From assembly GCF_001194135.2 (NCBI RefSeq), contig NC_069008.1, forward strand, positions 4,290,865-4,323,216: 32,352 nt of DNA. Reading direction: 5' to 3'. A model generated the notes under the pieces. The model saw nothing but the letters and a program-made list of their open reading frames with translations, searched no databases and had not been told where the DNA came from. The position numbers were made by a program, and so were the translations under genes. Source of the DNA: Octopus bimaculoides (taxonomy: Eukaryota). Shown here piece by piece: positions 6,646-14,252 of the stretch (its first letter is position 1; every line of letters begins with the position of its first letter).

Positions 6646-6655
6646 GTATCCTTTT
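6646..6655 (+). promoter_or_regulatory. U12-type (minor spliceosome) 5' splice site GTATCCTTTT
   Basis: It matches the established RTATCCTTT consensus exactly at the exon boundary defined by protein similarity. Confidence 0.9.
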
Positions 6656-6994
6656 AGTGTGAGAAATTGTGTCAAATGTTGTTTTGCCTCAAATCTGTAT
6701 TTTTTTAACCCTTCTTTCTTTTTTCTTTCTTTCTGTATTTCTCTCCTTTACCAGTTCACCATCACAGTTGCTCCACCATCATCTAACATGATAAAAAACA
6801 ATATAGTCTTTTATAAGATGAAGACTCCTTTTGGTCGTGAATGGCTGTGGGATTGCACCGAGAAAGTACCTCCACAAGGCACATGCTAGCAATTCTGCAT
6901 CATCATCATTTAATGTCTGTTGTCCATGCTGACGTAGGTTGGATGGTTTGACCAGAGCTCTCTATTCTGCCAACCAGCTGCATTCACTACCTTT

Positions 6995-7213
6995 AATGAT
7001 AGTCCTTTCTACTGAAGGCACAAGGCCTGAAATTCGTGGAAGGGGACCAGTTGATTACATTGACCCCAGTGTTTCACTGGTACTTAATTTATTTACCCCA
7101 AAAGGATGAAACACAAAGTCGACCTTGGCGGAATTTGAACTCAGAATGTTACAGCAGATGAAATACTGCTAAGCATTTCGCCGGTGTGCTAACAATTCTA
7201 CCAGGTCGCTGCC
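6995..7213 (-). mobile_element. SINE family E (tRNA-like head, gtcgactttg..tttcatccttt..ggg central domain), tail a
   Basis: Homologous to copies at 7216, 15295, 18745 and 25672. The central domain resembles the Meta/Sauria-SINE domain (recalled, unverified). Confidence 0.8.
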
Positions 7214-7215
7214 TT

Positions 7216-8110
7216 TGATAATCCTTTCTACTCTAGACACAAGGCCCGGAATTTGTGGGGAGGGAAAATAGTCAATCACATCAATTCCAGTGAATCACTG
7301 GTACTTAATTTATCGACCCCCTAAAGGATGAAATGTGAAAGTCGACCTCGGCAGAATTTTGAACTCAGAACGTGGGGAGGGGGCTAGTCTATCACATCGA
7401 CCCCAGTACTTGACTGGTACATAATTTATCGACCCTGAGAGGATGAAAGGTACATTCCACCGTGACAGAATTTTGGACTGAGAACGTGGGGTGGGGGCTA
7501 GTCTATCACATCGACCGACCCCAGTACTTGACTGGTACATAATTTATCGACCCTGAAAGGATGTAAGGCACAGTCCATCTCGACAGAATTTTGGACTGAG
7601 AACGTGGGGTGGGGGCTAGTCTATCACATCGACCCCAGTACTTGACTGGTACATAATTTATCGACTCTGAAAGGATGAAAGGTACATTCCACCTTGACAG
7701 AATTTTGGACTGAGAACGTGGGGTGGGGGCTAGTCTATCACATCGACCTCAGTACTTGACTGGTACGTAATTTATCGACCCCGAAAGGATGAAAGGCACA
7801 GTCCACCTCGACAGAATTTTGGACTGAGAACGTGGGGTGGGGGCTAGTCTATCACATCGACCTCAGTACTTGACTGGTACGTAANNNNNNNNNNNNNNNN
7901 NNNNNNNNNNNNTTGACAGAATTTTGGACTGAGAACGTGGGGTGGGGGCTAGTCTATCACATCGACCTCAGTACTTGACTGGTACGTAATTTATCGACCC
8001 CGAAGGGATGAAAGGCACAGTCCACCTCGACAGAATTTTGGACTCAGAATGTAAAAATGGACGGAAGCATTTTGCCCAATGTGGAAATGATTTTGTCAGT
8101 CAGCTGCCTC
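7216..8110 (-). mobile_element. SINE family E copy expanded internally by a 114-bp tandem array
   Basis: It starts like the 6995 copy (aatcctttctact..acaaggc) and ends with the same head-side sequence (aagcattttgccc...cagctgcct). The array lies between these ends. Confidence 0.8.
7374..8052. repeat. Tandem array of six ~114-bp units with alternating X/Y variants
   Basis: The anchor (c/t)gt after cagaa/gagaa falls at 7371, 7485, 7603, 7717, 7831, 7936 (after a gap) and 8050. Confidence 0.95.
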
Positions 8111-8519
8111 TAATAACATCAGTGGTAACACCAACAACAGCAATGTTGCCGACGACGACAACATTGATGAGCGAGGGTGGTGGCGGCACCATTGACGATG
8201 ACGATGACATTGATGTCATTGGATCGTGGGTGTTGTGCGAGTGCGCGCGTGCGTGTGGGTATATGTATGTAGACGCAGCGAGATATCGACAGTGACCTTC
8301 ATGCTGTTAAAACTGTGACTTTTTAATCTGTTAGTTTATGTTAACCACTGCTACTCGCATCTCCTCCCACTCCTCTTCAGCTGCATCTGTGTGCACCTTA
8401 CAACGCTGTTTCTCCACTAAACACTTGCACTGCTGCAAGTCACACGCAATGTTAGTATGCTGGTTGCAGCTGTTATTGCACTGCACGTCTTGAGTGCTGT
8501 CTTTTTCCATCCCCCCCTC

Positions 8520-8821
8520 GTAATATATATATGTGTGTGTGTATGTATAAAAATAGATGGATATTTACACGTATGTATATATATATATATGTATATATAT
8601 GTGTGTGTGTGTATTTACTAGAAAAAGAATGGTGCATCTACTGATAAGAGCCTTGTTAAATTTCTGTAAATGTGTGTGTATGTATGTATACAACACACAC
8701 ACACAACACATCTATATATTTTTGTATGTGTTTGTGTAAATATATATGTGTATATGTATGCATGTGTGTGTGTGTATGTATGCCAGTACGTGTTCATATA
8801 TATATATATATGTATGTGTGC

Positions 8822-8900
<79 letters not shown>

Positions 8901-8951
8901 TATGTCTGTGTATATATTTGTGTATATATGCATGTGTATGTATATGTGTGC

Positions 8952-8987
<36 letters not shown>

Positions 8988-9475
8988 GTGTGTGTATAAT
9001 GTATGTATATGTATGCATATATGTGTGTATACATGTGTATTCATATGTATGTATGTATATGTATTTGGATTATATATATATATGTGCATGCTTTCATGCA
9101 AGTACATACTTACTGACGTATGCACACATATCTATACTCAGCAGATAAATATATATATATATATATATGCACACACACATACACACACACACACACACAT
9201 CTACATGATGACATGCGTACTTACACGACCATGCATTCTTATGTACACACTCCTACATGTATATCATATGTACATATATTTTCTTTTTTACATCCACATA
9301 TACACCACATGCATACATACTACTACATGCAAATGCATATGTCTATATATATATATATACACATAAACATTTTTCGGTCTATATATGTTTTAAATTATAC
9401 GATTCTAAGTTGCACTGAGCACCAGACTCCTACACACATACGAAATGTTACACATATGCATGCATGCATATATAN
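8520..9475. repeat. Compound (TA)n/(TG)n/(CA)n microsatellite field
   Basis: Read directly. Similar fields occur at 12600-14150, 14900-15280 and 20230-20950, and most assembly gaps abut such repeats. Confidence 0.95.
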
Positions 9476-10247
9476 NNNNNNNNNNNNNNNNNNNNNNNNN
9501 NNNNNNNNNNNNNNNNNNNNNNNNNNNNNNNNNNNNNNNNNNNNNNNNNNNNNNNNNNNNNNNNNNNNNNNNNNNNNNNNNNNNNNNNNNNNNNNNNNNN
9601 NNNNNNNNNNNNNNNNNNNNNNNNNNNNNNNNNNNNNNNNNNNNNNNNNNNNNNNNNNNNNNNNNNNNNNNNNNNNNNNNNNNNNNNNNNNNNNNNNNNN
9701 NNNNNNNNNNNNNNNNNNNNNNNNNNNNNNNNNNNNNNNNNNNNNNNNNNNNNNNNNNNNNNNNNNNNNNNNNNNNNNNNNNNNNNNNNNNNNNNNNNNN
9801 NNNNNNNNNNNNNNNNNNNNNNNNNNNNNNNNNNNNNNNNNNNNNNNNNNNNNNNNNNNNNNNNNNNNNNNNNNNNNNNNNNNNNNNNNNNNNNNNNNNN
9901 NNNNNNNNNNNNNNNNNNNNNNNNNNNNNNNNNNNNNNNNNNNNNNNNNNNNNNNNNNNNNNNNNNNNNNNNNNNNNNNNNNNNNNNNNNNNNNNNNNNN
10001 NNNNNNNNNNNNNNNNNNNNNNNNNNNNNNNNNNNNNNNNNNNNNNNNNNNNNNNNNNNNNNNNNNNNNNNNNNNNNNNNNNNNNNNNNNNNNNNNNNNN
10101 NNNNNNNNNNNNNNNNNNNNNNNNNNNNNNNNNNNNNNNNNNNNNNNNNNNNNNNNNNNNNNNNNNNNNNNNNNNNNNNNNNNNNNNNNNNNNNNNNNNN
10201 NNNNNNNNNNNNNNNNNNNNNNNNNNNNNNNNNNNNNNNNNNNNNNN

Positions 10248-10287
<40 letters not shown>

Positions 10288-10290
<3 letters not shown>

Positions 10291-12119: not shown

Positions 12120-12155
12120 TGCTGTCGTCGTCACTGTTACCACACCATCATCCCC

Positions 12156-12187
<32 letters not shown>

Positions 12188-12520
12188 CAACAACAATTTC
12201 ATCACCACTACCATCTTCGTCACCTGCCACCCCCATCACCACCACCACCACCACAATCTTCATCATCGTCTTCACCATCATCATCATCATCATCATCACT
12301 ACCAACACCACCTATACCAGCATCATCACAGCCATCAACAATAACATCATCACCACCACCACCACCAACACCATCATCATCAACATCATCATTAACAACA
12401 CCACCACCAACACCATCATCATCATTAACAACACTACCACTAACACCATCATCATCATCTTCATCATCGTCGTCATTAACAACACCATCACCATCACCAC
12501 TAACACCACCACCAACTGCT
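12120..12520. repeat. Compound trinucleotide microsatellite (CAC/CAT/AAC)
   Basis: Read directly. Similar tracts occur at 23570-23715 (GGT/AGT) and 31970-32220 (ACT/AAT). Confidence 0.95.
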
Positions 12521-12621
12521 GTGTTAATCAATAAAAACCACACTAAGCCGATTAATGTTGTCAGTTTTAATTTTCAGATTAGCCTCCATGATTACCTGCA
12601 AACGTACACACGCATACATCA

Positions 12622-12659
<38 letters not shown>

Positions 12660-12733
12660 TGAGTGCATGGTGTTACCTGAGATACACTAATACATCGTGT
12701 CTATGTGCATATATATATGTGTATGTGTACATA

Positions 12734-12783
<50 letters not shown>

Positions 12784-13080
12784 CACATATGCACACAGAT
12801 CGTCTGTCTCTCTCTCTCTCTCTCTCTCTCTTTTTCCTTTTCCTCATGCTCATACTTCTGTCTTTTCCTTTCTGTTCTCTTTCACTCCCTCCCCACACCT
12901 ACGACACACACACACATCTGCATACATACATACATACATACATACATACATGCATATATATATATATATGCATTCCACACATGCACCATACTCTCTTCCT
13001 CTTTCCCTCCTTGATCACTCTCACATGCACATTTTTCACATACATATAATACACACACATATATATACATTTACACATGC

Positions 13081-13129
<49 letters not shown>

Positions 13130-13259
13130 CTCACACATAGTTTCTCTAATTTTTTTAATTCAACGTTTTTCTTCATACTTGTTGACTCTTATATTTTCTC
13201 TCATTTTCTGACATTTCCCTCTTTTTCCACACACACACACACACTTTTTCTCTGTGTGT

Positions 13260-13294
<35 letters not shown>

Positions 13295-14237
13295 CCTCAA
13301 TATATATCTGTCTCCCTTTCTTATACAGACACACATTCTCCTCTCTGTCTGTCTCTCTCTCTCTCCCAATATCTATGTGTCTATCTCCCACATGCACAGT
13401 CTATATCCGTCCATCTATATCTGCCTGTGTTTGTTATATTCTACATATAACTAGCTATCTTTCTCTTTCACACAAACATAAACTATATATATATATGTGC
13501 ATACATACACAAACAAACACATAAACGCACAATGTGTTTCGAAAACTGAGGGCAGCAACACAACGTTTGCGCACATTAACAACCTCCTCTCTCAGGTTTG
13601 TCATTTGCTGCTTTTATGTGTTTTATTTGTCTTCAAAGCTTGTTTTTTTTTTTCAAAAAATAATTTAAAATTTAAAAAACAAAAAATCGCTTCTTTTCAG
13701 ATATTGTGACCTTATCAAGAAATTTTTCTTATTTATATATAGCACACACGCATAAACACACAAACCACTCATATACATACATATATATATATATATATAG
13801 CATCATATATAATCATCATCATTATATATATATATCGTTATCATTTATTTATATATATTCACACATAGATACCTACACAGATACATACCCACGCATATAT
13901 TCACACATACACACACATAGTCTATATGTGTACATATAAGTACATGCACATATATCCATACACGTGCACATATACATACACACACATATATTCACATGCA
14001 CACACACACACACATGCATATGCACTCGCATTCATAAACACAAACATTAAAAGACACACCTGTACATACACCTATGTATTTACCTGTCACAAAAACACAC
14101 ACATACACACACACACACACACTCTCTCTCTGTTTCACTTACACACCTTTTGGAACACTACCACGTATTCATCACATCATTAGTATAGTGTCTGGTAACT
14201 GTAATGGCAATGTTGTTAGCCTAACGAGTTAAATGAA

Positions 14238-14252
14238 TCCTTAACGAAATAG
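14238..14252 (+). promoter_or_regulatory. U12-type branch site TCCTTAAC plus 3' splice site AG
   Basis: TCCTTAAC lies at 14238-14245, and the first downstream AG at 14251-14252 is the exon boundary. There is no polypyrimidine tract. Confidence 0.88.

What the first reader, a model, noticed from the sequence alone, without database searches (positions are those of the whole stretch)
6646..14252. A ~7.6-kb U12-type (minor spliceosome) intron splits the GAK kinase N-lobe
Seen: the donor is GTATCCTTTT. The 3' end is aatgaaTCCTTAACgaaatAG, with no pyrimidine tract and the first AG after the branch motif as the boundary. The six downstream GAK introns with both ends visible have ordinary U2 signals. 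Known: RTATCCTTT plus TCCTTAAC close to the 3' site defines U12 introns, which are rare, slowly spliced and often rate-limiting. Inference: GAK output (clathrin uncoating, including synaptic vesicle recycling) may be throttled by the minor spliceosome. The intron has absorbed a mariner, a satellite array and many SINEs while keeping both signals intact. Retention would truncate the kinase right after alphaC. The branch-to-AG distance is short (about 9-10 nt).
Basis: partly seen in the sequence, partly recalled or inferred. Interest (0 to 1): 0.75.

Follow-up and report, generated by a model that had tools for sequence, protein, structure and literature searches.

The report
Conserved minor-spliceosome intron in GAK
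The intron is a real U12-type (minor-spliceosome) intron in the GAK kinase gene, but it is the counterpart of one already catalogued in human and mouse and shared by animals from jellyfish to mammals, so it is ordinary.

Summary
GTATCCTTT starts at 6646, TCCTTAAC lies at 14238-14245 and the AG at 14251-14252. Each motif occurs only once in the window on either strand. Transcript contigs and raw RNA reads join 6645 directly to 14253. On matrices built from catalogued human minor introns, the donor scores 13.2 bits and the branch site 10.6 bits, both inside the U12 range. The gene's other donors score -12 to -18. The acceptor region has no pyrimidine tract.

The protein is a clear GAK orthologue. 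The intron is not new. The Minor Intron Database lists the GAK intron in human (ATG|GTATCCTTT) and mouse, at the same phase-0 site before KKLSGHP. I found U12 signals at that site in scallop, jellyfish, spider, fish and hedgehog. Sea cucumber has a U2-type intron there, and a moth has none.

The "throttle" inference has no support. In three RNA runs, 2 of 37 reads on the 60-base exon 6586-6645 ran into the intron at the donor, and none did at the acceptor. The assembly gaps all lie inside the intron, so only its length and content are uncertain. The one oddity is a short branch-to-3' spacing of 8 nt, against 10-16 nt in the orthologues.

The parts
6586..6645 (+). GAK exon encoding RLLANDDEKSHIIMEEIRYL (helix alphaC); ends in phase 0
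   Evidence: RNA contigs and reads cover exactly 6586-6645. The translation aligns to human GAK PDB chains.
6646..6654 (+). U12-type 5' splice site GTATCCTTT
   Evidence: It is the only RTATCCTT in the window. It scores 13.2 bits on the U12 5'ss matrix and is the best of 3,678 GT sites in the window.
6646..14252 (+). U12-type GT-AG intron, nominally 7,607 nt; the length is uncertain because it contains 811 N in three gaps
   Evidence: The 6645^14253 junction is seen in RNA. Gaps are listed.
7269..8049 (.). 114-bp satellite array, about 6.9 copies, spanning the 28-N gap
   Evidence: family D13.
10345..11140 (-). Degenerate mariner-like transposase relic, interrupted by a high-copy SINE-like insert and a 10-N gap
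   Evidence: translations. Weak Pfam matches to HTH_48 (E=0.021) and Transposase_1 (E=0.069), in the correct order.
10734..10888 (.). Very high-copy dispersed repeat (SINE-like) that contains the gap at 10826-10835
   Evidence: Contig word depth reaches 10^5-10^6 in three runs, and many different flanks are attached.
14238..14245 (+). U12 branch-point sequence TCCTTAAC; branch A at 14243 or 14244
   Evidence: It is unique in the window. The 12-mer GAATCCTTAACG scores 10.6 bits, against a training range of 4.2-17.3.
14251..14252 (+). 3' splice site AG, the first AG after the branch site; no pyrimidine tract upstream (37% Y at -30..-4)
14253..14367 (+). Next GAK exon, KKLSGHPNVVQF...TELCTG; followed by a U2-type donor GTAAGT

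Best explanation
The interval 6646-14252 is the GT-AG-subtype U12 (minor-spliceosome) intron of the GAK (cyclin-G-associated kinase / auxilin-2) orthologue of this genome, probably a mollusc.

Inferred mechanism, from established knowledge of minor splicing: U11 snRNP pairs with the GTATCCTTT donor. U12 snRNP pairs with UCCUUAAC and bulges one A as the branch point. With no pyrimidine tract, the first AG a few bases downstream is taken as the 3' site.

Shown here: the motifs are present, the junction is used in mRNA, and the site is orthologous to the catalogued human and mouse GAK minor intron. The site also carries U12-type signals in cnidarians, molluscs, chelicerates, fish and mammals. The intron is therefore an ancient, conserved minor intron that has been inflated in this lineage by repeats.

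Not shown: dependence on the minor spliceosome, or any regulatory (rate-limiting) role.
For: Motifs: present and unique in the window.

Junction: 6645^14253 is seen in two independent transcriptome assemblies and in raw reads.

Matrix scores: matrices were built from 44 human GT-type U12 donors and 77 branch sites of the Minor Intron Database. The donor scores 13.2 bits (training range 5.0-18.7) and the branch site 10.6 bits (4.2-17.3). The five neighbouring donors score -12 to -18 (the first matrix used window base composition as background). Pyrimidine content at -30..-4 is 0.37 here and 0.56-0.81 in the neighbours.

Gene identity: 388 bits to human GAK kinase structures against 185 bits to AAK1.

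Prior knowledge: the Minor Intron Database lists Gak/GAK as a minor-intron gene in both species. The human donor is ATG|GTATCCTTT with branch site TCTCCTTTAACA, at chr4:911788-912734. The mouse donor is TTG|GTATCCTTT. ATG is the Met of ...EVCFM|KKLSGHP in the human protein, which is the same site as ...IRYL|KKLSGHP here. PMC6239176 also names GAK among mouse U12 genes.

Orthologous introns at the same phase-0 site, donor/branch-site bits:
- scallop: 14.8/13.4
- jellyfish: 17.5/9.1
- spider: 13.2/13.4
- fish: 13.7/7.4
- hedgehog: 11.4/9.0
Against: No experiment here shows dependence on U11/U12/U4atac/U6atac. The minor snRNA genes of this genome were not examined, and none lies in the window. 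The branch-to-3' spacing of 8-9 nt is below the published optimum of 11-13 nt (PMC6717393) and shorter than in all five U12 orthologues examined. The donor score sits in the lower part of the training range (14th percentile) because of the G at -1. Human and mouse GAK share that feature.
Confidence: 0.93

Rival explanations
1. The intron has U12-like motifs but is removed by the major (U2) spliceosome. It has GT-AG ends, and some introns with U12 consensus can be used by both machineries.
For: The ends are GT-AG. PMC10853781 (abstract) reports sites spliced by both spliceosomes. In sea cucumber the same site has become a U2-type intron, so the position tolerates U2 splicing.
Against: The donor GTATCC has no G at +5 and fits U1 pairing poorly. 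There is no pyrimidine tract (0.37). The U12 donor and branch-site motifs have been kept at this site across cnidarians, molluscs, arachnids and vertebrates, which implies selection for U11/U12 recognition.
Confidence: 0.04
2. In this lineage the intron acts as a rate-limiting throttle on GAK output. It is U12-type, at least 7.6 kb long and has sub-optimal branch spacing, so it would be slowly spliced or retained. Retention would give an early stop (VSF*) and decay of the mRNA. This builds on the U12 reading rather than replacing it.
For: Minor introns as a class are reported to be spliced more slowly (PMC4066798 abstract). The spacing is 8 nt against an optimum of 11-13 nt. There is an in-frame TAG at 6655-6657. 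Two reads of run X24 run from the exon into the intron, while none do at the neighbouring U2 sites.
Against: In three RNA runs only 2 of 37 reads on the 60-base exon 6586-6645 entered the intron at the donor, both in one run. No read covered 14207-14248, against a depth of about 30 on the first bases of the downstream exon. The numbers are too small to separate this site from the U2 donor at 14367 (0 of 62). Steady-state RNA cannot measure rate. Retained transcripts may be lost to decay or kept in the nucleus.
Confidence: 0.1
3. Assembly artefact: the donor and acceptor do not belong to one continuous intron. The scaffold would be mis-joined at one of the three gaps, or a further exon would be hidden in a gap.
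For: Three N-runs lie in the interval. I could not bridge any of them. The exon upstream of 6586 is also missing from the window.
Against: mRNA joins 6645 directly to 14253 in several runs, with no intervening sequence. Exon order and strand stay collinear with GAK along 20 kb. A mis-join would change the length, not the class of the splice signals.
Confidence: 0.03

Closest known systems
Human and mouse GAK minor intron (Minor Intron Database, Olthof et al. 2019, PMC6717393; human chr4:911788-912734, ENST00000314167)
   Same: Same gene and the same phase-0 position, between ...[FY][ML] and KKLSGHP. Same GT-AG subtype, same GTATCCTTT donor with G at -1, and a TTAAC-type branch site close to the 3' end.
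   Different: The length is about 7.6 kb here, against 947 nt in human, 808 nt in mouse and 171 nt in hedgehog. The branch site here is a perfect TCCTTAAC, whereas mammals have C[CT]TTTAAC. The branch-to-3' spacing is 8 nt here and 14 nt in hedgehog.
Orthologous GAK introns of scallop (Pecten maximus), jellyfish (Rhopilema esculentum) and spider (Stegodyphus dumicola)
   Same: U12 donor and branch site at the identical codon boundary. The spider intron is also very long (10.5 kb).
   Different: Their branch spacing is 10-11 nt, not 8 nt. Scallop (1.2 kb) and jellyfish (0.85 kb) introns are short.
U12-to-U2 intron conversion and minor-intron loss, a known evolutionary pattern (Larue & Roy 2023, PMC10639083)
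   Same: The same GAK site is U2-type in the sea cucumber Apostichopus japonicus (GTAATT donor, -12.1 bits) and has no intron in the moth Helicoverpa armigera.
   Different: The window's intron has not converted. It keeps both U12 signals.

Membership tests
U12-type (minor-spliceosome) intron, GT-AG subtype | 5' splice site matching RTATCCTTT at +1..+9 | tested here: met
   GTATCCTTT matches 9/9 at 6646-6654. It scores 13.2 bits on a matrix from 44 catalogued human U12 donors, within the training range, and is the top GT site in the window.
U12-type (minor-spliceosome) intron, GT-AG subtype | Branch-point sequence TCCTTAAC-like, close to the 3' splice site (optimum 11-13 nt) | tested here: met
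   A perfect TCCTTAAC lies at 14238-14245 and scores 10.6 bits. The spacing of 8-9 nt is shorter than the published optimum, but the site is used in RNA.
U12-type (minor-spliceosome) intron, GT-AG subtype | No polypyrimidine tract before the 3' splice site | tested here: met
   Pyrimidines make up 37% of -30..-4, against 56-81% in the five neighbouring introns scored.
U12-type (minor-spliceosome) intron, GT-AG subtype | The boundaries are real splice sites used in transcripts | tested here: met
   The junction 6645^14253 appears in contigs of X12 and X5 and in raw reads of X26.
U12-type (minor-spliceosome) intron, GT-AG subtype | Positional orthology with catalogued minor introns | tested here: met
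   The human and mouse GAK minor intron has ATG/TTG|GTATCCTTT at ...CFM|KKLSGHP. Hedgehog, fish, scallop, spider and jellyfish have U12 signals at the same site.
U12-type (minor-spliceosome) intron, GT-AG subtype | Removal depends on U11, U12, U4atac and U6atac snRNPs | not testable with these tools
   This needs snRNA blocking or knock-down in the organism.
U12-type (minor-spliceosome) intron, GT-AG subtype | The genome encodes the minor snRNAs | not tested
   Only the window is available, and Rfam finds no RNA gene in it. The literature reports molluscs as relatively rich in minor introns (PMC10639083).
GAK / auxilin-2 orthologue (NAK kinase family) | Kinase domain closer to GAK than to AAK1, BMP2K or STK16 | tested here: met
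   Human GAK chains score 388 bits (E=1e-115), AAK1 185 bits, BMP2K 181 bits and STK16 86 bits. The best named database hits are cyclin-G-associated kinase.
GAK / auxilin-2 orthologue (NAK kinase family) | PTEN-like, clathrin-binding and J domains downstream of the kinase | tested here: inconclusive
   Only the start of the post-kinase region (LKGAGGSLFKNIKDASSKV, 26540-26611) lies in the window. The rest is beyond it or in gaps. In scallop and sea cucumber, the gene model directly downstream of the kinase model carries PTEN_C2.
mariner/Tc1 transposon relic | Mos1-type HTH and DDE transposase domains | tested here: inconclusive
   HTH_48 gives E=0.021 (15.4 bits) and Transposase_1 gives E=0.069 (13.5 bits). 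Both fall below Pfam cut-offs but lie in the right order on the minus strand. There are several frameshifts and stops.

The most novel reading that the evidence does not exclude
In this lineage the ancient GAK minor intron has two unusual features. Its branch-to-3' spacing (8 nt) is below the range seen in five orthologues (10-16 nt) and below the published optimum. Repeats have also expanded it roughly six- to forty-fold over the five shorter orthologous introns examined (171-1,216 nt). Together these could make its removal unusually slow or tissue-regulated, giving a lineage-specific post-transcriptional control point on clathrin uncoating.
Probability: 0.08. Interest if true: 0.35.

Novelty: already known. 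Interest (0 to 1): 0.15.

Why it matters
It matters little beyond correct annotation. The result confirms that the first-stage reader can recognise a minor intron from raw sequence. It adds one more lineage to an intron already known in mammals, and shown here to date back at least to the cnidarian-bilaterian ancestor.

There are two practical points. First, gene predictors can mishandle this intron. The fish model P0005 starts its protein inside the intron's 3' end, so GAK models in new genomes should be checked at this site. Second, the GAK site is a tidy example of three evolutionary outcomes for a minor intron: kept as U12, converted to U2 in sea cucumber, and lost in a moth.

Tried and rejected
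- Joint count: I could not count the junction as a joint in one read-laying run, because the intron is longer than the 6,000-letter limit. I used loose ends at each side instead.
- Failed calls: and one search were rejected by a filter on microsatellite stretches.
- Gap bridging: the attempt at 10826-10835 with DNA-like runs only showed that the gap lies in a very high-copy repeat. No gap was closed.
- Upstream exon: I searched the window for the exon seen in RNA (…ATCAGCACTGGCAAGGAGTACGCCTTGAAA) and found no match.
- Mariner ORFs: Pfam on the raw ORFs gave nothing at E<0.01. Stitched read-through translations gave only sub-threshold mariner hits.
- Repeat search: the repeat finder on the whole window was dominated by artefacts from N-runs and microsatellites.
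- Missing orthologue loci: the tick (P0007) and plant (P0118) loci were not on record.
- Sphaeroforma: the locus L008 has an intron just before KLGSQ with a U2-looking acceptor. The upstream exon was not in the fetched flank, so orthology and type are undecided.
- Paralogues: AAK1, BMP2K, STK16 and DNAJC6 do not appear in the held supplements of the Minor Intron Database paper. This suggests, but does not prove, that among mammalian NAK kinases only GAK carries a minor intron.
- intronIC: it is not installed, so I substituted matrices built from catalogued human sites.
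Full report
**What is in the sequence.**
- The exon 6586-6645 ends ...AGA TAT CTG and is followed by GTATCCTTTTAG.
- The interval ends ...aatgaaTCCTTAACgaaatAG at 14252 and is followed by AAA AAA CTG TCC GGA CAT CCG.
- [AG]TATCCTT and TCCTTAAC each occur exactly once in the 32,352-base window when both strands are counted.
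- The window contains twelve N-runs. Three of them (7885-7912, 9475-10247, 10826-10835; 811 N in all) lie inside the interval.

**Gaps first, as the scan's program asked.**
- All three gaps are intronic, so reading frame across them is not an issue.
- Whether the two exons are consecutive is answered by RNA. Transcriptome contigs of runs X12 and X5 match up to 6645 and then continue AAAAAACTGTCCGGACATCCGAATGTGGTT, which is 14253 onward.
- From the other side, the same contigs carry CCACATTATTATGGAGGAGATAAGATATCT just before 14252.
- Seven raw reads of X26 show the same join.
- One G fits both sides, so the aligner places the cut at 14252 or 14253. GT...AG is the canonical reading. No constitutive exon is hidden in a gap.
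- The intron's true length and content remain unknown. One bridging attempt was rejected by a filter. The other showed that the 10-N gap sits inside a repeat with contig word depths of 10^5-10^6.

**Gene model.**
- tblastn with human GAK, followed by inspection of splice sites, gives these exons: 6586-6645, 14253-14367, 15847-15983, 19908-20033, 22606-22695, 23417-23552 and 24676-24810. A further exon ends at 26614.
- Joined, these exons read as one open 266-residue kinase sequence.
- It scores 388 bits (E=1e-115) against human GAK kinase-domain structures, against 185 bits for AAK1, 181 for BMP2K and 86 for STK16. The best named database hits are cyclin-G-associated kinases, the closest being scallop at 75% identity. 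The gene is a GAK orthologue, probably of a mollusc.

**Is it U12-type?**
- intronIC is not available. I built log-odds matrices from 44 human GT-type minor-intron donors and 77 branch sites listed in the Minor Intron Database supplement (PMC6717393).
- The window's donor ctg|GTATCCTTT scores 13.2 bits, against a training range of 5.0-18.7 and a median of 15.7. Human GAK scores almost the same. All three are pulled down by the G at -1.
- It is the highest of 3,678 GT sites in the window. The other five donors of the gene score -12 to -18.
- The branch 12-mer GAATCCTTAACG scores 10.6 bits, against a training range of 4.2-17.3 and a median of 11.8.
- Pyrimidine content at -30..-4 is 0.37, against 0.56-0.81 for the neighbouring introns.
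- All sequence-level criteria of a GT-AG U12 intron are met. Dependence on the minor spliceosome itself cannot be tested with these tools.

**Is it new? No.**
- The Minor Intron Database lists Gak/GAK as a minor-intron gene in both mouse and human. The mouse donor is TTG|GTATCCTTT with branch site TCTTCTTTAACA. The human donor is ATG|GTATCCTTT with branch site TCTCCTTTAACA, at chr4:911788-912734, 947 nt.
- The ATG before the human donor is the Met of ...QEVCFM|KKLSGHPNIVQF in the human protein. That is exactly the site of ...EEIRYL|KKLSGHPNVVQF here.
- PMC6239176 names GAK among mouse U12-intron genes. PMC12637451 lists it among human ones.

**Orthologous loci.** I fetched these and read the same codon boundary. 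Scores are donor/branch-site bits.

| Species | Donor | Branch site | Bits | Length |
|---|---|---|---|---|
| Scallop | ctt\|GTATCCTTG | GATCCTTAAC | 14.8/13.4 | 1,216 nt |
| Jellyfish | ctt\|GTATCCTTT | AACCTTAAC | 17.5/9.1 | 850 nt |
| Spider | ttg\|GTATCCTTT | TTTCTTGAC | 13.2/13.4 | 10,541 nt |
| Fish (Umbra) | atg\|GTATCCTTT | CACCTTGAC | 13.7/7.4 | 719 nt |
| Hedgehog | ttg\|GTATCCTTC | TTCCTTTAAC | 11.4/9.0 | 171 nt |
| Sea cucumber | ctg\|GTAATTAAT | none (best 12-mer -0.9) | -12.1/-0.9 | 592 nt |

- The sea cucumber intron sits at the same site but is U2-type.
- The moth Helicoverpa has no intron there.
- The intron is therefore at least as old as the cnidarian-bilaterian ancestor. 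It is retained as U12 in most lineages sampled, converted once and lost once in this small sample. That pattern is already well described for minor introns (PMC10639083, which also notes that molluscs and arachnids are relatively rich in minor introns).

**Function and the "throttle" idea.**
- Retention would read GTA TCC TTT TAG, a stop after three codons. This truncates the kinase after alphaC and, by the usual rule, targets the mRNA for nonsense-mediated decay.
- Steady-state retention is low in three raw-read RNA runs, each sampled at about 6%.
  - At the donor, 2 of 37 reads laid on the 60-base exon 6586-6645 run into the intron. Both are in X24 and probably come from one fragment.
  - At the acceptor, no read covers 14207-14248, while depth on the first bases of the downstream exon is about 30.
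  - At the neighbouring U2 donor (14367), 62 reads are spliced and none is unspliced.
- These numbers do not separate the minor intron from its neighbours, and steady-state RNA does not measure rate. The throttle inference is neither shown nor excluded. I give it about 0.1.

**The one oddity.** The branch A lies 8 nt (second A, 14244) or 9 nt (first A) before the last intron base. The published optimum is 11-13 nt, and the five U12 orthologues have 10, 11, 11, 14 and 16 nt. The site is nevertheless used.

**Intron content.**
- A 114-bp satellite of 6.9 copies lies at 7269-8049.
- Long AT, CA and CAT/CAC microsatellites are present.
- Dispersed SINE-like repeats at 7040-7182 and 11640-11735 have copies in other introns of the gene. 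A very high-copy element lies at 10734-10888.
- A decayed mariner-like relic lies on the minus strand at about 10345-11140. Its Pfam support is sub-threshold (HTH_48 E=0.021; Transposase_1 E=0.069).

**Verdict.** The finding is the expected orthologue of a catalogued, deeply conserved minor intron. Novelty: already known. Interest: low.

Noticed in passing
L004:1001-1030 (Umbra pygmaea, protein P0005): The deposited fish gene model starts its protein (MNHLDLSVSQ|KKLSGHP) inside the 3' end of the U12 intron. Its ATGAACCACCTTGACC... is the branch-site region. The true upstream exon with a GTATCCTTTT donor lies about 700 nt upstream at L004:261-311. The predictor apparently missed the minor intron.
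   Followed up: partly
L002:4903-5494 (Apostichopus japonicus) and L005:2342-2752 (Helicoverpa armigera): At the same GAK codon boundary, sea cucumber has a U2-type intron (GTAATT donor, pyrimidine-rich acceptor) and the moth has no intron. These look like a U12-to-U2 switch and a loss at an otherwise conserved minor-intron site.
   Followed up: partly
window 10734-10888: This is an extremely high-copy dispersed repeat. Contig word depth reaches up to 2.8 million in X15, and dozens of different flanks are attached. It contains the 10-N gap and appears to be inserted into the mariner relic.
   Followed up: partly
window 6300-6450: Repeat copies just upstream of the exon show very high RNA depth, many variant positions and many different loose ends. 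This is a transcribed dispersed repeat (SINE-like) ending in a GAT/ATG triplet run. A similar element lies near 26150-26230.
   Followed up: no
window 1-6585: The exon that precedes 6586 in the mRNA (...ATCAGCACTGGCAAGGAGTACGCCTTGAAA, encoding ISTGKEYALK) is not in the window even with 2 mismatches allowed. It lies either in a gap (2107-2717 or 3944-4135) or more than 6.5 kb upstream.
   Followed up: partly
L001 and L002 (Pecten maximus, Apostichopus japonicus): In both genomes the deposited annotation splits GAK into two adjacent gene models. One is a kinase-only protein of 305 or 351 aa. The next gene carries PTEN_C2 and is 1067 or 933 aa. The sea cucumber kinase model also translates intronic sequence.
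   Followed up: no
window 22742-23328: An 18-bp tandem array of about 30 copies fills most of the 721-nt U2 intron between exons 22606-22695 and 23417-23552.
   Followed up: no
window 12140-12520: A long imperfect CAC/CAT/AAC triplet microsatellite of about 380 nt lies inside the U12 intron. It creates spurious His-, Thr- and Asn-rich ORFs on both strands.
   Followed up: no
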